Positions 24,546-46,103 of a stretch of 46,103 bases of DNA are shown piece by piece. The stretch lies in the NCBI GenBank assembly GCA_002104905.1, contig MCFE01000683.1:1-46103 (forward strand). Direction: 5' to 3'. Source of the DNA: Basidiobolus meristosporus CBS 931.73 (Eukaryota; Fungi; Basidiobolomycota). Each line of letters begins with the position of its first letter. Positions within the stretch are counted from its first letter, which is position 1. Both the position numbers and the translations under genes were made by a program. The notes below the pieces were generated by a model. That model was not told the DNA's origin. It did no database searches and saw nothing but the letters and a program-made list of their open reading frames with translations.

Positions 24546-25068
24546 TCAACAGCAGCATTTTTCAGCTGAAAATGGACTATAAGATCCGCCGGTCCGATAA
24601 AATCTGTTTGACATTGGGCTTGCATCTAATGTAGACTTTTCCGCGTTGAAACTCTCCGAGTGATTCGGTGCTAGGTTGTTTCTGAAGAGTGCATCTTTAA
24701 GGAAATCATCGATTTTCACCACAACATTGAAGAGCCGGTCATGTAAGCAATCGCCTGTCAGGACGTTCTCTTCGTGGTGTTCCACCTGGAACAGCTATGG
24801 GGTTGAAATTGCCCCATGATTCCGAGAGCGCTTGGAAAGGTCCCATCACCCTTGGTGCGAGATTGGAGTAGCCACTACCGATTTGGTATTTGTCGCTCTC
24901 TGGGTTCTCAGGCAGGTTAAAATGGTTTCGATACCTGTGCGAATGAAGGGTTGACGTCTCGCGGGGATTTTGGCTGCCCGCTATCCTTGGTGTAGAGCTT
25001 CTGTTGCCCCCATTGAATTGGTTGGCAAGTTTCTGCTTGGTTTCACATTTAGGAGTGATGTGGACCAT
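24546..25068 (-). CDS. Hypothetical two-exon gene (3' extent uncertain; may continue towards 23904)
   Basis: ORFs 24739-25077 and 24546-24785 can be joined by a ~60-nt GT...CCAG intron; no recognisable domain. Confidence 0.25.
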
Positions 25069-25473
25069 AATGCTCAAGGGGTATCGACCAAACTAAAATT
25101 AGATAGATTACTAACGCGATATGGAATCAACTGAATCTTCGTAAATATCGTTCTACGCTTGTTCTCACAAGTCTCTTTACCGCTACCGCTGAATGTTTTA
25201 GTATCTGGGACAAATACTTGAATTTAGCCTCGAATATGCATCCTCTCAGGAGAACGGAATAATATCATTGATTGCGGATCTCACTGTTGACAAGCGTACT
25301 GGTTACCCGTCAACAACCACCCTGTATCTGACTATAAAACCAACCTTCGTCGCTGAAATCTATATTCATAATTCGGAGCTCAACACACCCCAGACAGCAG
25401 TGTCTTATCAACACTATCCAGTGCCTCGTAACCCTGCAGCCCTCTGCTTGTCTAATAACAACGTAAACTCAGA

Positions 25474-26623
25474 ATGTCAGGTTCGTACTCTCAAAGCAGT
25501 GGTTGGCGGAGCCTATGTTGATTTCCCTTTCTTGATAGATCACGACACAACCTCTTGGGTAATGATGGTGGCCGATGTGTTCATTTCTATGTCTTACATG
25601 GCAATCCCGATCGAAATCTTCTTCTTCCAGCGTACCCTCACTCTGCCGCTGCCCATGCTCTACAAGAGTGTCCTGCTTCTTTTCGAAGCTTTCATCACTG
25701 CTTGCGGAGCCACCCACTTGGTGACCGTCTGGAAACCTTTTGCTAACACTGAGGTGGCCCTATGTGTTGTGAAGGTTGTCACAGCAGTCATCTCGACGCT
25801 CACGGCGATTCTGCTGATCCAGGTATTCCCCAAGGCGTTCTCGCTACCCGCGAGAGCCGCCTGGTTGGAGGAGGAGTTGGGATCTCACATGCGGCACGAG
25901 CAATCGCTTCGAATGGCCAACGACCTGCTGCTCAAGTTCCGCAAAGTCACCCAGCATATTCGCAGGACACTCGACACCAACTCCGTCTGCCAGACATCGG
26001 TGTTTGAGCTCTCTGTGACCCTGGGGGTGGGTTGTGCGATCTACATGAAAGAGGGAGACACCTATGTGTGCACCCACGAGGACTACAGACATGTCAATGA
26101 TCATTCACTCCGCCACTCGGACAAGAACATCTTCTGGCAGAAGATCAGGATATCCAAGGAGAACAAGATGATCACCAGGATGGCCACCCTCTCATACGCC
26201 TGTTGCCTTAACAAGAGAGATCTCAGTGACATGGTGGGGGAGGGGGTGAACCTGCCATTCAAAGCGGCCATGGGGGTCCGCTTCAAGATCGATGGGAAGG
26301 ATTCCGGGTTCGTGCTGATCTACTCGAGTGAGGAGACATGGAGCTTACCGGAGCAGGAGGTGGAGCTGTTTGAAGATATAGTAGGCCAAATTGAGATCGC
26401 TCTTCAACAATCTTCGCAGCTATCGAAGGAACATGGATGGAAATCCCCCAGTTCAAAGCTTACCCAGAGTATAGAAACTCCGGGACATGCTGATGAGCGA
26501 GGACTAGGATCATTACGACAAAGTGCAGCGGAAGCAACGCTGCCTTCTTCATCACCTCCACCATTTTCGAACCATGGTCAAGAGTACGAGGTATATGATA
26601 TTGAGCCTAAATACTGGCATTAA
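25474..26623 (+). CDS. Ethylene-receptor-like membrane protein A (ETR1-type ethylene-binding domain + GAF, no kinase), 363 aa; exons 25474-25480, 25539-26623
   Basis: ADVFISMSYMAIP...LFEAFITACGATHL...VKVVTAVIS aligns with Arabidopsis ETR1 (SDFFIAIAYFSIP...QFGAFIVLCGATHL...AKVLTAVVS). IRRTLDTNSVCQTSVFEL resembles the ETR1 GAF start IRSTLDRHTILKTTLVEL. 58-nt GT-AG intron after ATGTCAG. Confidence 0.9.
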
Positions 26624-28413
26624 TACTCACCATTAGTCTGTCACGATTTTGATCACTGGTGCGGGCAATGAAATGGTTGCCATTATTGACTTCAAATGAC
26701 AGAACTGTCCTTGGAAAAGCGCTAATGAAATTTCGAAATCTTGTAAATGTATAATCAATAAATACTACAAACCTGGTCTAATCAATACTTTGTGGATCTT
26801 CAGTCATGAGAACTGGAGCTGTTTCTCATCCAGATTTGTTCAACCCTTGTCAGACATGCTATTTTGTAATTTACAGAAACCTAAACAAGATCTGTTGCTC
26901 TGTAACGAGATTGAGGACGAGAGCATTGCTCTGTCAATATATCTATATTGCACATCCAAACTCAAATTCGATCTGAGTAATGTAACCTATACTTGGCATG
27001 TTAACGCACCGAAGGATCCAGAAAAGTTCAGGATAGCGGATACAATTGTACACAAAGCATTACTCCAAATATTTGGGGTCATTTGGGCATGATCTGAATA
27101 TGACCATCAACATTATTGGGCTCCTATAACAAAAGGTGAACGCTACGCTACAGCCCTGCATTTTCAGAGTCAAGTAATTAGATTTTAAAGGTTGTTAATC
27201 CATGATACTATAGTAGATCTCAGTTGGCTCAAATTACTTTCCAGAGTGATTTACTTTATTCCGTTGAAATATGAGATTAGATTAGATGGAATTGCTATTG
27301 TAATTAGGAGTTCATAGGGCTACAAGAATAAAAGATGTGGTGCTTATATTATGGCCAGTTGAGGGGCTTCATGTCATATGCCTCCCCATCTTTTCCTTCA
27401 TCATGATACGAGAAAGGTGGTGGTGGCGGTAAAGAAATAGAGGTGTTGTGGTGGAGATTGGACAATCGGAATTTAGCCTCTTCCTCATCAGGCTTACCAG
27501 CTTCAAGGAGCTTCCCATGGCTGGATTTTCCACTTGCCTCGTTTTTCAATTGAGCAGATTGCTGAAGAGCGATCTCAATTTGGCCTACTATATCTTCAAA
27601 CAGCTCCACCTCCTGCTCCGGTAAGCTCCATGTCTCCTCACTCGAGTAGATCAGCACGAACCCGGAATCCTTCCCATCGATCTTGAAGCGGACCCCCATG
27701 GCCGCTTTGAATGGCAGGTTCACCCCCTCCCCCACCATGTCACTGAGATCTCTCTTGTTAAGGCAACAGGCGTATGAGAGGGTGGCCATCCTGGTGATCA
27801 TCTTGTTCTCCTTGGATATCCTGATCTTCTGCCAGAAGATGTTCTTGTCCGAGTGGCGGAGTGAATGATCATTGACATGTCTGTAGTCCTCGTGGGTGCA
27901 CACATAGGTGTCTCCCTCTTTCATGTAGATCGCACAACCCACCCCCAGGGTCACAGAGAGCTCAAACACCGATGTCTGGCAGACGGAGTTGGTGTCGAGC
28001 GTCCTGCGAATGTGCTGGGTGACTTTGCGGAACTTGAGCAGCAGGTCGTTGGCCATTCGAAGCGATTGCTCGTGCCGCATGTGAGATCCCAACTCCTCCT
28101 CCAACCAGGCGGCTCTCGCGGGTAGCGAGAACGCCTTGGGGAATACCTGGATCAGCAGAATCGCCGTGAGCGTCGAGATGACTGCTGTGACAACCTTCAC
28201 AACACATAGGGCCACCTCGGTGTTGGAGAACGGCTTCCAGACGGTCACCAAGTGGGTGGCTCCGCAAGCAGTGATGAAAGCTTCGAAAAGAAGCAGGACA
28301 CTCTTGTAGAGCATGGGCAGCGGCAGAGTGAGGGTACGCTGGAAGAAGAAGATTTCGATCGGGATTGCCATGTAAGACATAGAAATGAACACATCGGCCA
28401 CCATCGTTACCCA
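25556..28413. repeat. Inverted repeat: arms 25556-26406 and 27563-28413 (851 bp each), 1156-bp spacer
   Basis: Hand alignment finds 9 mismatches and no indels across 851 bp. Confidence 0.95.
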
Positions 28414-28500
28414 GGAGACTGGATTATCTTCCACAACTGGTAATACAAAAGGTTAATAACTGTCATCAGCGGTTCTGTAAGAATTGTACATACTTTGCAT
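27349..28500 (-). CDS. Ethylene-receptor-like membrane protein B (ETR1-type EBD + GAF, no kinase), 364 aa; exons 28500-28494, 28436-27349
   Basis: Same domains as gene A; 57-nt GT-AG intron after ATGCAAA at the same phase-1 position. Confidence 0.9.
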
Positions 28501-29310
28501 TTTGCTAAGGTATTGATCACTCGATAGTGTTTTGGTGGGACTTGATTAGGATTTCATGTGCTTTATAGAAATCTCAGCAATACAGGAGTAGCCTTGGACG
28601 GCGCTTTCGTATCATGAAATAGATGAAATACATTTCATAAAAAGAAAACTGGCTACCCAGCTGGTTACAATTGAAACTATTCCCCTGAGATTCTTGCTAA
28701 TGCCATTGGCATAGCTGACATCTTGCAATGGATGTACCGAGCTGGCCGACTACCCATTAAGATCTGGATCTCTGAGAGAAGAAATCTCCGAGTCTCAATT
28801 CCTCGATTTTCTCATAATCCTCAGAGTTGGCATGGTGAATTGAAAACGACCATATTAAAATGGAGACAGGGTCCGATCTCAGTTGATGAGGCTTGCTATA
28901 TACAATTAAAAATAGGAGCATTCGATGGTCTAGATTCTGACCAACCTGTTGACCGGTTGATTGGGCTAACTTGTTTTGTTTAGCTTAGGTTTGGCTCCCT
29001 CCTGGCCAAGCGCAAATGAAATATTCCAGTTAATTAGTTAATCTCCGGAATCATTTAACACTTGATTAAAAGGGGCACTTCATCTGTTGACAGAAACACC
29101 ATAACTGTATTTGGTTCAAATTGAAGTGCAAGCCTCTTGAGTTTGGTCAGACTTTCCCCGTGTCATTTGACTGGGAATTGGCGATTGATTCACCTTGCAT
29201 AAGAGCAGCACTGTCTGATATCGGCGGAAGGCTGACTGTATAACCCTCCTCATAGCAACAGACCTACCAATTTAACGCATTTGCAAAAACTGCCGTTGCG
29301 TGCACCTTAA

Positions 29311-29607
29311 TCAATGTTTCTCACCCAAAAATCGCTTCCCAAGCGTATGCCACCATTGGCCTATCAGCTGTGCCAGAAAATATTGCCACCGACGCTGGTG
29401 GTTAAGGAGAATTAAGCGTGTTGCTATGGCCTTGAAGAGCATGACCACTTCCTCATGATACGCAATATAGCCCATTAATGCTGCGTACAACGGCGACAAT
29501 ATCCAAATCGTGTAGTATATCTCCGACTGACACGATTCTTTGGCTGCACAAACGTTCACTTGATTACTCGATTGTCTAGGAATGCTTTCCGTAGTGGTCT
29601 GAACCAT
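29311..29607 (-). CDS. Hypothetical small membrane protein
   Basis: ORF with one hydrophobic stretch (IYYTIWILSPLYAALMGYIAY); no homology recognised. Confidence 0.2.
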   Translation of the reverse strand: MVQTTTESIPRQSSNQVNVCAAKESCQSEIYYTIWILSPLYAALMGYIAYHEEVVMLFKAIATRLILLNHQRRWQYFLAQLIGQWWHTLGKRFLGEKH

Positions 29608-39008: not shown

Positions 39009-42000
39009 TGTTGTAAGAGTCTTGGAGATATTGGAAGTGAATGGTGTTGTAAGAGTCTTGGAGATATTGGAAGTGATTTGGAGAACAAGTAGATTATGTG
39101 GTTTTCACTTAATGATTTATTGAATGTAAAAGTAGTATTTATACTTTTACCTGGTCTAGGCATTACAAACATGTAGAATAGGTTAAGGAAGGTCCAAAGA
39201 ACATGTGTGCAAAGTTTGGGGCTGTTTGGACAACTTTGAGAATTCTCATGTTCTGGGTACCTGGTATTTTGGTGAAAATATTCTAAGTAAATCCCAACAA
39301 GGAATTTGGTCAGTATTCTCTAGGATTTGAAGGTGATGATCTAAGTGACTAAGTTAGGTGAATATTTAGGTGGAAATACAAATTTTTACAACACTCCCAC
39401 TCAGCCAAATGTTCATACTGACTAGTCCTAATTTTGACCTAAGATATTCAAACTTGTCTCTAGCTAATGGTTTGGTGAATATGTTCGCAATCATTTCATC
39501 TGTAGAACAGTAAGCTAAGCTAACTAAGTTATTCTCTATAGCTTCACATATGAAATGATGTCTAATATCTATGTGCTTGGTTCTAGCATGAAAAGTTGGA
39601 TTTCTACCTAATTGTATACATCCTTGATTATCTTGAAATAAAGTAATAGGCGTTTTTTGACATAGGCCTAAATCTGTAAAGAGCTTTCTTAACCACATTG
39701 CTTCTTTTGTAGCTTCACAGGCTGCCATATACTCTGCCTCTGTAGTAGAAAGTGCTACGGTTGGTTGCTTTCTTGAATTCCATGAAATTGCTCCTTTACA
39801 GTAAAGAAAGGTGTATCCTGTGGTGGATCTTCTGTCTTCCAAATTTTGTCCCCAATCAGCATCAGAGTATCCCACAAGATCCTGTTCTGAGTCCTTATAA
39901 GTGTATCTTAAGCAGATATCAGCAGTTCCTTTTAGGTATCTAAAAATCCGCTTAACTGCTGCAATATGATCAGATCCATAATTCTGATTATGTTGGCTGA
40001 CAACTCCCACTGAATATGAGATATCTGGACGTGATCCAAGCATGATATACATCAGACTGCCGGCCATAGATTGATAAGGAATGTCAGGGCTTTCAGATGG
40101 CACCAAGCTCTCTTGATTTGGTTGAGTTTTGACCAAGTTAAGGTTTGTCTCCATTGGGGTAGCTGCAGGTTCACAGTCTTCCATTTTGTACTTCTTTAGT
40201 ATATCTTGAATATACTTGGATTGGCTTAGGGTAATAGTCTGGGTACTTCTGTCTATGGAGAACGTAATCCCTAAGTAGTAACTAAGTTCTCCTAGATTGG
40301 ACATCTTGAACTCTTTAGATAGGCTGGATTTAGTTTCTTTCAATGTTTCTAGGTTATTGGCGGCTATAATAAGATCATTCACATGCAGAGCTAATAGAAC
40401 TGGATTTGCTCTATCTGGCCTATAGTATATACTATAGTCAGCATTACTTCTTTTGAAACTCAAGGATTCCAAATAGAATCTATCTTGCAATTCCAGGCTC
40501 TTGGTGATTGTTTGAGACCATATAGTGACTTTTTAAGCTTGCAGACCAAATGGGGGTTATCTTGGTCAGCAAACCCATCAGGCTGGTCCATATACATGTC
40601 CTCATCAAGTTCTGCATTTGAAAATGCAGTTTTTACATCCATTTGATGAATAAGAAACTTATATTGGGCTGCAGTAGCCAATATTAATCTGATGGAATTA
40701 AACTTGGCTACTGGTGCAAAGGTCTCAGTATAGTCAAGTCCTTTTGTTTGAGAGTATCCTTTGGCTACAAGTCTTGCTTTGAATCTTTCAATTGTACCAT
40801 CAGCCTTGTATTTTGTCTTGAAGACCCATCTGCATCCAATTGACTTTTGGTTGATTGGTAACTTGACTAAGTCCCAAGTTTGAATTTCCATCAGGGCCTG
40901 ATATTCCTCAGTCATTGCAGATCTCCAAAACTTTGTCTCAGGGCTATTTAGGGCCTCTTTTACAGTCTGGGGTTCATCAATATGGACTGAATGGGCATAG
41001 GCTAAGTTTGTACCCTCATTAATATAGTAATTTGGACTATTTCTTGTCCAATTGGATCTCCAGGCATTTGATACTGGAATGATCACTTCTGGGATATTCC
41101 TGGGCACTGATTCTGGCTGAACCACGGTTGTAGAGTCCTCTGGAGTGGAATATTTTCATTGTTTTGCTCTGATTCGATCCTGACAATTGGTGGACTTGAG
41201 ATCAAATTTTTGTCATCATCTGATGTCATTTTTTGTGAAAATTTTGCATTTTCATCAAACAAAACACCCCTGGACTTGATCAGCTTCTTTGCTTTGGTAT
41301 TGTAGAGTCTGTATGCCTTACTCTCATTGCAGTAGCCCAAAAATATGCATTTTACACTTTTTGGCTCAAGTTTTGACTGATTTCCGGCCAGTTTTTTGGC
41401 ATATGCTGTACACCCAAATATTCTTAGATGTTCTGCTCTTGGTCTGTATCCATACCATGCTTCAAATGGAGTAGAATCACAAAGTATTCTGTTATAACTC
41501 CTATTTTTAAGGTATACAGCAGTGGCAACTGATTCCGCCCAAAAATCATAGGATAATTTTTGATCATGGATCATAGATCTTGCCATATCAATTATTGATC
41601 TGTTAGCTTGTTCTGCTACTCCATTTTGCTGTGGGGAGTATGGTACAGTAGTCTCTTGCTTTATCCCATGAATTTTGCAGAAGTGGATGAAGAGTTTTGA
41701 GGTATATTCTCCACCTTTGTCAGAGCATATTTTCTTGATTTTTTCACCAGTTTCTCTCTCCACCATGGCTTTAAACTCCCTGAGCTTAGACAAAGCTTCT
41801 TCCTTACTCTCCATGAAGTAGACCCATGTGTATCTTGTAAAATCATCAATAAAAGTGATTAAATACTTCATCCCGCCTAGGATAAATTTTGCATAGGTCC
41901 ACACAGATCTGAGTGAATTAGATCTAACTTTTCCTTAGTTTTGATTAACCCAGAGCTCTTGAACAGTTGTCTGGCTTGTTTCCCATATATGCAGGCGTCA

Positions 42001-43807
42001 CAGTGCTCCAAATTAGCTGGTGGATCAATTTTCACTTCAGAAATTAGCTGATCTTTGTTCATTTTGCACAAATAATCAAAATTGATGTGCCCAAATCTCC
42101 TGTGCCAAAGTATTGGTGTTTCTTCATTTAAGTTACTTATATTGGCTTCCAGATATGATGGAATATAAGTCAACTAGTATAGATTCTGAACTCTGATGCC
42201 CAAAGCAATATGAGCACCATTTTGATCGGTGATCCTGCATCCAGAATTGTCAATACAGAAACTGAGTCCTTCTGCTTTGGCCTTGCTTACAGAGAGTAGG
42301 TTCTTGGCTATTTCTGGTACATAGAGTACTTCTTTAAAGGTCAGTGTATGGCTTCCTTCACTGCTTCTAAGGTTTACTTGGATAGTTCCTTCTCCCACTG
42401 CATCAAGTGCTCTATTGTCACCCATGAAAACCTTCTTAATTGGAATTTCTTGATATTGGGTAAAAAGTTCTTTTTGGTGTGTAAAGTGTTGAGATGCTCC
42501 AGAGTCAATATACCACATCTGAGAATCCTTGTTTGTGGTCATATTTAGTGCAGATATGAATAGTCTATCTTCAGTTGTTGCAGCATTTCCATATTCAGGC
42601 TTCTTTTGCTGATTATCTTTCTTTTTGAGACACCGGTCTGATGTGTGTCCTTTCCTTTTGCAGTAGTTACAAAACAGGTTGCTGTTGCCTTTGTAGGGTC
42701 TTTGGTACCTCCTTTGTTGGTTATCATTGCTTATTAAAGCATTTTCTTCTTCCTTCTTATTGGCGCTTGATTTTCTTAATTCTTCATCCAGGAGCCTTCC
42801 ATATATGTAATTTAAGGTCAAATCTTTAGTTCTGGACTCTGGGGCTGAAACAAGGCCCTGAAACTTGTCTGTCAGGCTATTCAGGATGGTAACTATCACA
42901 TCCTCATCAGTAGTTGGTACACCCACAGATTCCATCTCATCTACCAGCAGGTTAATTCTGTTAATTAGATTTTTCATTTCTTCTCCTGACAGCATCTTTG
43001 TAGTAAAGAATATTTGTCTCAGATATATTTTCTTAGCAGCTGAGCATGACTGGTAGGTGTCCTCTAATGCTTTCCAGGCATTCTTTGCTGTTTTTGCTCT
43101 TGAGCATTGAATTAGCAATTTGTCCTTGACATTAAGGCATATGCAGTTAAAGGCACTTTGTTCTTTCTTCTGGTACTTTAAGGCTTCCTCTCCCACGTTT
43201 TTAGGAGGGCATTCTTCTCCCATGACAATATCCCACAGGCCTCTTTCTTGTAGCAGCATCTTCATCTTCACCTTCCACACTTGGTAGTTAGATCCATCCA
43301 ACTTTTCAGCAGAGGGAAAAATTCCAGTAATAGCAGTAGTAGACATTGCAGAGAGTGACAGCTTGGGGCTCATAACCTGTTGTAAGAGTCTTGGAGATAT
43401 TGGAAGTGATTTGGAGAACAAGTAGATTATGTGGTTTTCACTTAATGATTTATTGAATGTTAAAGTAGTATTTATACTTTTACCTGGTCTTGGCATTACA
43501 AACATGTAGAATAGGTTAAGGAAGGTCCAAAGAACATGTGTGCAAAGTTTGGGGCTGTTTGGACAACTTTGAGAATTCTCATGTTCTGGGTACCTGGTAT
43601 TTTGGTGAAAATATTCTAAGTAAATCCCGACAAGGAATTTGGTCAGTATTCTCTAGGATTTGAAGGTGATGATCCAAGTGACTAAGTTAGGTGAATATTT
43701 AGGTGGAAATACAAATTTTTACAACAAATGGGAGGACAAGTAGATTATGTGGTGTTCTCTTATGATCTATTAAATGTAAAAGTAGTATTTATACTTTTAC
43801 ATGATCT
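39009..43807 (-). repeat. Split LTR of element D (pieces 39009-39044 and 43727-43807), target of elements E and F
   Basis: Removing E rejoins tgttgtaagag...ggaagtg-AATGG-gaggacaagtagattatg..., a variant family LTR. Confidence 0.85.
39045..43726 (-). mobile_element. Full-length (4682 bp) Ty1/copia element E with LTRs 39045-39393 and 43378-43726; gag-pol disrupted
   Basis: 349-bp LTRs differing at 4 positions; AATGG TSD (39040-39044, 43727-43731); PBS 43366-43377; PPT 39394-39403; gag CCHC knuckle (CNYCKRKGHTSDRC), protease DSGAS, integrase HHCC and DDE, RT, RH. One stop, three frameshifts, RT YVDD changed to HVND. Confidence 0.97.
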
Positions 43808-46103
43808 TGTTGTAAAAGTTAGTATTTCCACCTAAATATTCACCTAGCTTAATCACTTAGATCATCACCTTCAAATCCTAGAGAATACTGACCAAACTCC
43901 TTGTTGGGATTCACTTGGAATATTTTCACCAAAATACCAGGTACCCAGAACATGAGAATTCTCAAAGTTGTCCAAACAGCCCCAAACTTTGCACACATGT
44001 TCTTCAGACCTTCCTTAACCTATTCTACATGTTTGTAATGCCAAGACCAGGTAAAAGTATAAATACTACTTTAACATTCAATAAATCATTAAGTGAAAAC
44101 CACATAATCTACTTGTTCTCCAAATCACTTCCAATATCTCCAAGACTCTTACAACAGGTTATGAGCCCCAAGCTGTCACTCTCTACAATGTCTACTACTG
44201 CTATCACTGGAATTTTTCCCTCTGCTGAAAAGTTGGATGGATCTAACTACCAAGTGTGGAAGGTGAAGATGGAGATGCTGCTACAAGAAAGAGGGCTTTG
44301 GGATATTGTCATGGGAGAAGAATGCCCTCCTAAAAACATGGGAGAGGAAGCCTTAAAGTACTAGAAGAAAGAACAAAGTGCCTTTAACTGCATTTGCCTT
44401 AATGTCAAGGACAAATTGCTAATTCCATGCTCAAGAGCAAAAACGGCAAAGAATGCCTGGAAAGCATTGGAAGACACCTACTAGTCATGTTCAGCCGCCA
44501 AGAAGATGTATCTGAGACAAAAATTCTTTACTACAAAGATGCTGTCAGGAGAAGAAATGAAAATCTAATTAATAAAATTACCCTGCTGGTAAATGAGATG
44601 GAATCTGTGGGTGTACCAACTACTGATGAGGATGTGATAGTTACCATCCTGAATAGCCTGACAGACAAGTTTCAGGGCCTTGTTTCAGCCCCAGAGTCCA
44701 GAACTAAAGATTTGACCTTAAATTACATATATGGAAGGCTCCTGGATGAAGAATTAAGAAAATCAAGCGCCAATAAGAAGGAAGAAGAAAATGCTTTAAT
44801 AAGCAATGATAACCAACAAAGGAGGTACCAAAGACCCTACAAAGGCAACAGCAACCTGTTTTGTAACTACTGCAAAAGGAAAGGACACACATCAGACCGG
44901 TGTCTCAAAAAGAAAGATAATCAGCAAAAGAAGCCTGAATATGGAAATGCTGCAACAACTGAAGATAGACTATTCATATCTGCACTAAATATGACCACAA
45001 ACAAGGATTCTCAGATGTGGTATATTGACTCTGGAGCATCTCAACACTTTACACACCAAAAAGAACTTTTTACCCAATATCAAGAAATTCCAATTAAGAA
45101 GGTTTTCATGGGTGACAATAGAGCACTTGATGCAGTGGGAGAAGGAACTATCCAAGTAAACCTTAGAAGCAGTGAAGGAAGCCATACACTGACCTTTAAA
45201 GAAGTACTCTATGTACCAGAAATAGCCAAGAACCTACTCTCTGTAAGCAAGGCCAAAGCAGAAGGACTCAGTTTCTGTATTGACAATTCTGGATGCAGGA
45301 TCACCGATCAAAATGGTGCTCATATTGCTTTGGGCATCAGAGTTCAGAATCTATACTAGTTGACTTATATTCCATCATATCTGGAAGCCAATATAAGTAA
45401 CTTAAATGAAGAAACACCAATGCTTTGGCACAGGAGATTTGGGCACATCAATTTTGATTATTTGTGCAAAATGAACAAAGATCAGCTAATTTCTGAAGTG
45501 AAAATTGATCCACCAGCTAATTTGGAGCACTGTGACGCCTGCATATATGGGAAACAAGCCAGACAACCGTTCAAGAGCTCTGGGTTAATCAAAACTAAGG
45601 AAAAGTTAGATCTAATTCACTCAGATCTGTGTGGACCTATGCAAAATTTATCCTAGGCAGGATGAAGTATTTAATCACTTTTATTGATGATTATACAAGA
45701 TACACATGGGTCTACTTCATGGAGAGTAAGGAAGAAGCTTTGTCTAAGCTCAGGGAGTTTAAAGCCATGGTGGAGAGAGAAACTGGTGAAAAAATCAAGA
45801 AAATATGCTCTGACAATGGTGGGAGAATATACCTCAAAACTCTTCATCCACTTCTGCAAAATTCATGGGATAAAGCAAGAGACTACTGTACCATACTCCC
45901 CACAGCAAAATGGAGTAGCAGAACAAGCTAACAGATCAATAATTGATATGGCAAGATCTATGATCCATGATCAAAAATTATCCTATGATTTTTGGGCGGA
46001 ATCAGTTGCCACTGCTGTATACCTTAAAAATAGGAGTTATAACAGAATACTTTGTGATTCTACTCCATTTGAAGCATGGTATGGAAACAGACCAAGAGCA
46101 GAA
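43808..46103 (+). mobile_element. Copia element F (5' LTR 43808-44156, PBS 44157-44168, gag-PR-IN pseudogene), runs off the window
   Basis: 349-bp LTR, GGTTATGAGCCC, near-identical to E in reverse orientation, with extra stops and indels. Confidence 0.95.

What the first reader, a model, noticed from the sequence alone, without database searches (positions are those of the whole stretch)
25474..28500. Pair of kinase-less ethylene-receptor homologs in a fungus
Seen: both proteins retain the ETR1 ethylene/Cu-binding residues (equivalents of D25, Y32, I35, P36, I62, C65, H69 in A-D-VF...S-Y-MA-IP...F-I-TA-C-GAT-H) and a GAF domain, then end in a ~70-aa tail. No HisKA, HATPase or receiver domain is present, and the 725 bp between the two stop codons holds no kinase-like ORF. 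Known: ETR-like receptors reported in early-diverging fungi are generally hybrid histidine kinases. Inference: these are intact, spliced, stand-alone EBD-GAF sensors that may signal in trans by GAF-mediated heterodimerisation with a full-length HK, act as decoys, or use a kinase-independent output. This would be a little-described fungal gas-sensing module.
Basis: partly seen in the sequence, partly recalled or inferred. Interest (0 to 1): 0.85.

Follow-up and report, generated by a model that had tools for sequence, protein, structure and literature searches.

The report
Kinase-less ethylene-receptor gene pair, Basidiobolus
Two facing genes in the fungus Basidiobolus meristosporus encode membrane proteins that keep the ethylene-binding and GAF parts of a plant-type ethylene receptor but have no kinase; the genes are real and under selection, but one of them was already published in 2017.

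Summary
The window is contig MCFE01000683.1 of Basidiobolus meristosporus CBS 931.73. It carries two convergent genes: A at 25474-26623 (+) and B at 27349-28500 (-). Each encodes about 363 aa: a three-helix ETR1-type ethylene-binding domain (Pfam ETR1_N, E about 1e-21) with all seven ETR1 ethylene-binding residues, a GAF fold, and a 68-aa tail.

No kinase or receiver sequence exists in the genes, in the 725-bp spacer or anywhere in the 46-kb window. A transcript contig confirms gene A's 58-nt intron and stops 8 nt after the stop codon. Gene B's unique parts were not seen in that run.

The core is under strong purifying selection: synonymous sites are saturated, while non-synonymous differences are 0.02-0.15 per site.

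It is not new. Gene A is Bm|388937| of Hérivaux et al. 2017, who called it "gene erosion". A 2023 preprint described receptors with only these two domains in Ancylistes and proposed output through the GAF domain.

Apparently unreported:
- five intact paralogs in this genome;
- pairs that usually flank a FANCM-like helicase;
- gene conversion of the cores;
- two conserved tail classes shared with B. ranarum.

The scan also noted kinase-less copies at two other loci of this genome (s1-227396, s1-233623) and read this same stretch again as s1-222174.

The parts
25474..25480 (+). Gene A, exon 1 (ATG plus 4 nt)
   Evidence: First ATG in the transcript contig that starts at 25307. Gives the N-terminus MSDHD..., the same as the published model Bm|388937|.
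25481..25538 (+). Gene A intron, 58 nt, GT..AG
   Evidence: A contig of run X3 skips 58 nt with GT..AG ends at this position (table 5).
25539..26623 (+). Gene A, exon 2 including the TAA stop (363-aa product)
   Evidence: ORF. The annotated product is 363 aa. Transcript contigs cover 25537-26631.
25553..25843 (+). Gene A ethylene-binding domain (three transmembrane helices)
   Evidence: Pfam ETR1_N, E 2.2e-21. The seven binding residues are conserved.
25976..26404 (+). Gene A GAF domain
   Evidence: Pfam GAF below threshold. The fold is confirmed on the 99%-identical gene B model.
26417..26620 (+). Gene A tail, class A (ends ...PPPFS...QEYE.YD.EPKYW.)
   Evidence: Alignment A3. Shared with P0004 and with B. 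ranarum P0006 and P0017. No Pfam hit.
26624..27348 (.). 725-bp spacer between the two stop codons
   Evidence: No kinase-like or helicase-like sequence. Its 100-aa ORF has no Pfam hit. No transcript coverage in X3.
27349..28436 (-). Gene B, exon 2 including the stop (product about 364 aa)
   Evidence: ORF. The annotation calls only 351 aa from an internal Met (P0001). The upstream frame is conserved in paralogs.
28437..28493 (-). Gene B predicted intron, 57 nt, GTATGT..CAG
   Evidence: Read from the sequence. Not confirmed by transcripts.
28494..28500 (-). Gene B predicted exon 1 (ATG plus 4 nt)
   Evidence: Read from the sequence, by analogy with gene A.
28123..28416 (-). Gene B ethylene-binding domain
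   Evidence: Pfam ETR1_N, E 6.5e-22. AlphaFold2 helices 5-34, 41-65 and 73 onward.
27565..27993 (-). Gene B GAF domain
   Evidence: AlphaFold2 model plus Foldseek matches to solved GAF domains and to AtETR1 residues 12-329.
27352..27555 (-). Gene B tail, class B (F.LSNLHHNT.SLPPPPPFS...YDMKPLNW.)
   Evidence: Alignment A3. Shared with P0002 and with the B. ranarum copies P0003 and L005:5954-6637. Modelled as mostly disordered.
25552..26418 (.). Left arm of the 867-nt, 99% inverted repeat (covers the ethylene-binding and GAF coding core of gene A)
   Evidence: The two cores differ by 8 synonymous and 1 non-synonymous changes.
27551..28417 (.). Right arm of the inverted repeat (core of gene B)
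   Evidence: DNA runs X1 and X2 collapse both arms into one 843-nt contig joined to unique flanks.

Best explanation
Genes A and B are functional, selected members of a five-copy Basidiobolus family descended from fungal ethylene-receptor hybrid histidine kinases. The family has lost the whole transmitter and receiver.

Each product is a membrane protein with three transmembrane helices that keep every residue known to be needed for Cu(I)-dependent ethylene binding in Arabidopsis ETR1. A long helix leads from the third transmembrane helix to a cytosolic GAF domain, which is followed by a short, mostly disordered tail.

The most likely working is as follows. The protein still binds ethylene. 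Having no kinase of its own, it passes the signal on through protein contacts made by the GAF domain with its flanking helices and by the conserved tail motifs (a proline run followed by an acidic and aromatic end). The family keeps two tail classes, usually one of each per gene pair, so mixed A/B oligomers are plausible.

Shown: domain content, absence of a kinase, transcription and splicing of gene A, purifying selection, paired arrangement, gene conversion, two tail classes.

Inferred: ethylene binding, output by protein contacts, A/B oligomers.
For: - Domains and binding residues. Fold.
- No kinase in the proteins, spacer or window.
- Gene A is expressed and spliced, and its transcript contig ends 8 nt past the stop.
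- Selection: among copies not homogenised by conversion, the proportion of synonymous differences is 0.62-1.0 (saturated), while non-synonymous differences are 0.02-0.20 per site in the ethylene-binding and GAF parts (Jukes-Cantor estimates give omega about 0.03-0.07).
- Contrast with a decaying copy: at locus L002 an unconstrained partner has shrunk to a 41-aa remnant.
- Tails: they fall into two classes shared by B. meristosporus and B. ranarum. Non-synonymous differences are 0.16-0.33 within a class and 0.44-0.62 between classes, leaving aside Bm_5, whose class-B tail has degenerated (0.41-0.46 against the other class-B tails).
- Stepwise loss: the nearest relatives (Neoconidiobolus, Conidiobolus, Entomophthora, Massospora) lack a receiver, score weakly or not at all for HisKA and HATPase_c, and have Lys or Gln in place of the phospho-accepting His. 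Kinase-independent working therefore came before the loss of the domain.
- From established knowledge: Arabidopsis ETR1 does not need kinase activity to signal, and its 1-349 fragment can signal.
Against: - No ethylene binding or response has been measured for any Basidiobolus protein.
- No partner is known, and the tail matches no known domain or motif family.
- The N-terminal Cys pair that links plant receptor dimers is absent.
- Gene B's unique parts have no coverage in the one transcript-like run. That argues against obligate co-expression of A and B, although contigs show presence, not absence.
- Gene conversion of the cores may be a neutral by-product of the inverted arrangement rather than a sign of joint function.
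Confidence: 0.5

Rival explanations
1. The proteins modulate other histidine kinases. They bind, through the GAF domain, unrelated hybrid histidine kinases of the fungus and tune their phosphorelay, as rice OsERS2 does with MHZ1/OsHK1.
For: The Ancylistes preprint proposes this for fungal receptors with only these two domains. The GAF domain is the most strongly conserved cytosolic part. Other windows of this genome were noted to hold many hybrid histidine kinases (unchecked notes).
Against: No interaction data exist. No full-length ethylene-receptor kinase was found in Basidiobolus. This reading does not explain the two conserved tail classes.
Confidence: 0.2
2. Gene erosion. The genes are remnants of a receptor on its way to being lost and have no present sensing role. 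This is the published reading of Hérivaux et al. 2017.
For: The series full kinase, then His-less kinase without receiver, then no kinase fits progressive loss. One partner copy at L002 is reduced to a 41-aa remnant, and P0005 has a degenerate tail.
Against: There are five intact copies in one genome and more in B. ranarum. Synonymous sites are saturated while amino-acid change in the core is 2-20%. All binding residues are kept. Gene A is transcribed.
Confidence: 0.07
3. The transmembrane domain serves another purpose than ethylene sensing, such as copper handling or cation conduction, as recently claimed for rice OsERS1/2.
For: Rice receptors were reported to conduct Ca2+ independently of Cys65 (PMC13261662). 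A protein made mostly of the membrane domain would suit such a role.
Against: The rice channel activity depended on Cys4 and Cys6, which these proteins lack. The strict conservation of the seven ethylene-binding residues and of the GAF domain is not explained by this reading.
Confidence: 0.1

Closest known systems
Bm|388937| of Basidiobolus meristosporus CBS 931.73 (Hérivaux et al. 2017, mBio, PMC5285503)
   Same: It is gene A itself. The sequence printed in the paper's supplement starts MSDHDTTSW, carries gene A's KPFANTE variant and ends EPKYWH. The window is a contig of the same assembly.
   Different: The paper lists one gene and reads it as erosion. It does not mention gene B, the three other paralogs, the paired layout, the tails or selection.
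Entomophthoromycotina ethylene-receptor homologs (Conidiobolus coronatus CcHHK3 = P0155/P0008, Neoconidiobolus P0007, Entomophthora P0009, Massospora P0169)
   Same: They are the closest relatives outside the genus, at 37-42% identity over the ethylene-binding and GAF parts. They have no receiver domain.
   Different: They are 576-626 aa and keep a degenerate transmitter domain in which the phospho-accepting His is Lys or Gln. Basidiobolus has no transmitter at all.
Kinase-less putative ethylene receptors of Ancylistes closterii (preprint 10.1101/2023.12.22.573025)
   Same: They are described as three transmembrane regions with the binding residues plus one GAF domain, with no histidine-kinase region.
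Arabidopsis ETR1 and its signalling-competent N-terminal fragment etr1(1-349)
   Same: The fold is the same over ETR1 residues 12-329, and all seven ethylene-binding residues are shared. That a natural protein could work like the 1-349 fragment rests on established plant genetics, not on a test made here.
   Different: Sequence identity is only 23-25%. The proteins lack Cys4 and Cys6 and lack the kinase and receiver. They carry a two-residue insertion in the loop between helices 1 and 2 and a proline-rich tail that plants lack.
Rice OsERS2 GAF domain acting on MHZ1/OsHK1
   Same: It is a precedent for an ethylene receptor's GAF domain regulating another histidine kinase (cited).
   Different: OsERS2 keeps a kinase domain. 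No such partner is known in Basidiobolus.

Membership tests
ETR1-type ethylene-binding domain (Pfam PF25487, ETR1_N) | Match to the family profile above the curated threshold | tested here: met
   76.4 and 78.1 bits against a cut-off of 27.
ETR1-type ethylene-binding domain (Pfam PF25487, ETR1_N) | Three N-terminal transmembrane helices | tested here: met
   AlphaFold2 helices 5-34, 41-65 and 73 onward, with block-mean pLDDT 82-96 over this region. The model superposes on AtETR1 residues 12-329.
ETR1-type ethylene-binding domain (Pfam PF25487, ETR1_N) | Residues needed for ethylene and Cu(I) binding in AtETR1 (D25, Y32, I35, P36, I62, C65, H69) | tested here: met
   All seven are present in genes A and B and in every full-length Basidiobolus copy aligned (P0003, P0004, P0005). 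The annotated P0002 model starts after D25 and Y32 but keeps the other five. Alignment A1 with a plant ETR1 ortholog.
ETR1-type ethylene-binding domain (Pfam PF25487, ETR1_N) | Saturable, copper-dependent ethylene binding | not testable with these tools
   This needs a 14C-ethylene binding assay on the expressed protein.
GAF domain (PF01590) | Profile match above threshold | tested here: not met
   14.0 and 14.7 bits against a cut-off of 22.4.
GAF domain (PF01590) | GAF fold | tested here: met
   Foldseek against solved structures gives probability 1.00 and E about 1e-6 to phytochrome and stand-alone GAF domains (3ci6, 3p01, 6ozb; TM by target 0.63-0.73).
Ethylene-receptor histidine kinases (plant ETR/ERS and fungal ethylene-receptor hybrid kinases) | HisKA (DHp) domain with a phospho-accepting His | tested here: not met
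   No HisKA hit in the whole proteins or in the tails at E up to 10. No kinase-like sequence in the window.
Ethylene-receptor histidine kinases (plant ETR/ERS and fungal ethylene-receptor hybrid kinases) | HATPase_c catalytic domain | tested here: not met
Ethylene-receptor histidine kinases (plant ETR/ERS and fungal ethylene-receptor hybrid kinases) | Receiver domain (ETR-type and fungal hybrid kinases) | tested here: not met
Ethylene-receptor histidine kinases (plant ETR/ERS and fungal ethylene-receptor hybrid kinases) | Common descent of the sensor half | tested here: met
   The best matches outside the genus are fungal ethylene-receptor homologs, then plant receptors.
Plant ethylene receptors | N-terminal Cys4/Cys6 disulfide-linked dimer | tested here: not met
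   There is no Cys ahead of helix 1 in either protein.

The most novel reading that the evidence does not exclude
Basidiobolus has turned a former two-component ethylene receptor into a new kind of kinase-free gas sensor. Paired genes supply two subunit types with identical, conversion-homogenised sensor and GAF cores but different, separately conserved C-terminal docking tails. The mixed complex would signal by recruiting cytosolic partners through those tails.
Probability: 0.2. Interest if true: 0.65.

Novelty: already known. Interest (0 to 1): 0.33.

Why it matters
The basic fact, a truncated ethylene-receptor homolog in Basidiobolus, has been in print since 2017, so the finding adds no new kind of system.

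The follow-up does change the accepted reading. The published view is that these genes are eroding. The data here instead show a family of five intact copies with saturated synonymous change and a nearly frozen sensor and GAF core. One copy is transcribed, and two tail classes are conserved between species. That is the signature of a working protein.

If these proteins do sense ethylene, they would be a natural experiment on a long-standing question in plant biology: how an ethylene receptor signals without kinase activity. They would also point to ethylene sensing in a fungus that lives in amphibian and reptile guts and on decaying plant matter.

Tried and rejected
- Distant kinase exon: rejected. 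The transcript contig of gene A ends 8 nt after the stop, and its only joint is the 58-nt intron. No kinase-like sequence lies in the 46-kb window.
- Tail as a vestigial H-box: by eye, F.LSNLHH resembles the FLA.MSHE motif. Pfam finds no HisKA signal in any of six tails even at E 10, so the idea is dropped as unsupported.
- Bacterial origin by horizontal transfer: Basidiobolus is known for this. It is not supported here, because the nearest relatives are fungal and the genes carry spliceosomal introns.
- Orthologs mistaken for paralogs: I first treated P0002, P0004 and P0005 as orthologs from another species. One search showed they are paralogs in the same assembly. The selection argument still holds, and true cross-species comparisons with B. 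ranarum were added.
- Searches that gave nothing: the genome-contig scan, as expected because it holds prokaryotes only; solved structures by sequence; an RNA run search over 4.1 kb; a look-up of the B. ranarum P0003 coding DNA by exact protein (the locus was reached through P0017 instead).
- Helicase relic: no remnant of the FANCM-like helicase lies in the window's spacer.
- Full-length ethylene-receptor kinase in Basidiobolus: none was found in the length ranges 200-630, 344-1095 and 571-1818 aa. These searches depend on shared 5-residue words, so absence is likely but not proven.
Full report
**What is there**

The window is the whole 46,103-bp contig MCFE01000683.1 of Basidiobolus meristosporus CBS 931.73, assembly GCA_002104905.1.

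Two long ORFs face each other at 25268-26623 (+) and 27349-28434 (-). Both match the Pfam family ETR1_N, the ethylene-binding membrane domain of plant ETR1. The scores are 76.4 and 78.1 bits against a cut-off of 27. Both match GAF only weakly, at 14.0 and 14.7 bits against a cut-off of 22.4.

The coding cores are the arms of an 867-nt inverted repeat that is 99% complementary: 25552-26418 and 27551-28417. The two proteins are 85% identical overall. There is one substitution in the core, and the last 68 residues have diverged.

**Gene models**

Gene A starts at ATG 25474. It has a 7-nt first exon, a 58-nt GT..AG intron (25481-25538) and a second exon that ends with TAA at 26621-26623. The product is 363 aa, the length the assembly's annotation gives.

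Run X3 is listed as "DNA?" but behaves like a transcriptome. It covers only 24909-25119 and 25307-26631, and one of its contigs skips exactly those 58 nt. No ATG lies between 25307 and 25474.

The last X3 contig ends at 26631, 8 nt past the stop. There is no other joint and no coverage from 26693 to 29400.

Gene B has the same layout by sequence: ATG at 28500, intron 28437-28493. Its unique parts are not covered in X3, so its expression is unconfirmed. Contigs show presence, not absence.

DNA runs X1 and X2 confirm the inverted-repeat layout. Each collapses the two arms into one 843-nt contig joined to unique flanks.

- Binding residues: an alignment with a plant ETR1 ortholog (P0030) shows the equivalents of D25, Y32, I35, P36, I62, C65 and H69 in both proteins. 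They are also present in every full-length Basidiobolus copy aligned and in the Entomophthoromycotina and Rozella relatives; the truncated P0002 model begins after the first two.
- Structure: an AlphaFold2 model of gene B (mean pLDDT 86.1) has three N-terminal helices. The third runs on as a long helix to a mixed alpha/beta domain at residues 148-312. The tail is mostly low-confidence.
- GAF fold: Foldseek matches that domain to solved GAF domains at E about 1e-6.
- Overall fold: the whole model matches residues 12-329 of the Arabidopsis ETR1 model at E 9e-18 with TM by query 0.69.
- No kinase: no HisKA, HATPase_c or receiver signal is found in the proteins or the tails. The kinase halves of seven relatives find nothing below E 0.5 anywhere in the window, while the positive control hits both genes at E 4e-40.
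- Spacer: it is 725 bp, as stated.
- Dimer cysteines: the N-terminal Cys pair of plant receptors is absent.

**Relatives and history**

A search of 1.8 billion representative proteins ranks the relatives as follows:

- After the Basidiobolus copies come Neoconidiobolus (626 aa), Conidiobolus CcHHK3 (621 aa), Entomophthora (576 aa) and Massospora (585 aa), at 37-42% identity over the ethylene-binding and GAF parts.
- Next come full hybrid kinases of Blastocladiomycota, Rozella and others.
- Plant receptors follow.

The Entomophthoromycotina proteins have no receiver, and their transmitter domain scores weakly or not at all. The phospho-accepting His is replaced by Lys or Gln. The series therefore runs from full hybrid kinase, to His-less kinase without receiver, to no kinase. 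This suggests that signalling stopped depending on phosphotransfer before the domain was lost.

**The family in Basidiobolus**

The same assembly holds three more intact copies:

- P0004 and P0005 are convergent around a FANCM-like helicase on MCFE01000106 (locus L001).
- P0002 lies next to a paralogous helicase on MCFE01000010 (locus L002). Only a 41-aa remnant of its partner lies beyond that helicase.

B. ranarum shows the same unit of receptor, helicase and receptor twice (loci L004 and L005). Locus L005 is a 6.6-kb contig whose two ends both stop inside a receptor gene, as expected if the assembler broke at identical inverted cores. The window's pair is the only one seen without a helicase between the genes, and no helicase remnant remains.

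**Selection and conversion** (Nei-Gojobori counts)

- Among copies that are not partners, synonymous differences are 0.62-1.0 per site, which is saturated. Non-synonymous differences are 0.02-0.20 in the ethylene-binding and GAF parts. This is strong purifying selection. One search gives omega of about 0.03-0.07 where dS could be estimated.
- Partners at one locus have low synonymous divergence over part or all of the core. The values are 0.03-0.06 for A/B, 0.08 in the ethylene-binding part of P0004/P0005, and 0.27 for the last third of the GAF domain in the L004 pair. This indicates repeated gene conversion.
- The tails are never homogenised. They fall into two classes found in both species.
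  - Class A comprises gene A, P0004, P0006 and P0017.
  - Class B comprises gene B, P0002, P0003 and the second L005 copy. P0005 is a degenerate member.
- Non-synonymous differences in the tails are 0.16-0.33 within a class and 0.44-0.62 between classes. P0005 (Bm_5) is left out of these ranges; it differs from the other class-B tails by 0.41-0.46.
- Both classes share a Leu-Ser-x-Leu element, a PPPFS proline run and a C-terminal Y-D-x-x-P-x-x-W element. None matches a Pfam family.

**What is already known**

The supplement of Hérivaux et al. 2017 (PMC5285503) prints Bm|388937|, which is gene A's protein. The paper calls the Conidiobolus and Basidiobolus proteins "striking truncated structures" that illustrate "gene erosion".

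The Ancylistes preprint (10.1101/2023.12.22.573025) reports receptors made of the transmembrane regions and a GAF domain with no kinase region. It suggests an OsERS2/MHZ1-like role for the GAF domain.

I did not find the following in those papers: the partner gene B, the five-copy family, the link to the helicase, the conversion, the tail classes and the selection result. The selection result argues against erosion.

**Most likely working**

These are membrane proteins that still bind ethylene through Cu(I) and signal without a kinase of their own. Output would run through GAF and helix-mediated oligomers and through the tail motifs. Mixed A/B complexes are possible.

Only the anatomy, the expression of gene A and the selection are shown. 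Ethylene binding and the output route are inferred. The rivals are modulation of other histidine kinases, a channel or copper role (a report on rice receptors is, but it depends on Cys4 and Cys6, which are absent here) and pure erosion. They are weighed in their own sections of this report.

**Earlier notes of this scan**

- s1-222174 reads the same stretch as a conversion-homogenised inverted repeat. My counts agree with that reading.
- s1-227396 and s1-233623 note kinase-less copies at two other places in this genome. Their sizes fit loci L001 and L002.
- s1-227312 named the species, which I then confirmed.

Noticed in passing
L001:8001-14941; L002:7941-13224; L004:2-6962; L005:2-6637: In B. 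meristosporus and B. ranarum the receptor genes usually sit as a convergent pair around a FANCM-like DEAD/Helicase_C gene. The helicase paralogs are 56-67% identical to one another, so the three-gene unit seems to have been copied as a block.
   Followed up: partly
L002:13102-13224: A 41-aa remnant of a receptor gene (63% identical to residues 216-256 of the gene A translation used as query) lies where the class-A partner of P0002 would be expected. One partner of that pair has decayed.
   Followed up: partly
L005:1-6638: Both ends of this B. ranarum contig stop inside receptor genes at the same residue (135). This is probably an assembly break at identical inverted cores.
   Followed up: no
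window 39366-45359: Frameshifted Copia-type LTR retrotransposon pieces (gag, integrase, RVT_2) lie on both strands in the AT-rich right end of the contig. A second partial gag and Pol_BBD copy is at 43915-45359.
   Followed up: partly
window 8-24 kb and L001:281-3249: The window and L001 share neighbouring genes (an RFX-type gene, a cytochrome P450, then the receptor pair). The two loci therefore look like old paralogous segments.
   Followed up: partly
window 24909-25119: A separate 211-nt transcript contig of run X3 lies about 190 nt upstream of the gene A contig. It could be a long 5' leader or an unannotated transcript.
   Followed up: no
window 27349-28434 (P0001) and L002:7941-9017 (P0002): The public annotation starts gene B, P0002, P0004 and P0005 at internal Met codons. 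In P0002 this removes part of helix 1, including the D25 and Y32 equivalents. The conserved upstream frame and the confirmed gene A model suggest that all have a tiny first exon plus a short intron.
   Followed up: partly
P0009 and P0157 (Entomophthora muscae): E. muscae does encode a receptor homolog of 576 aa, although the Ancylistes preprint says this species lacks one.
   Followed up: no
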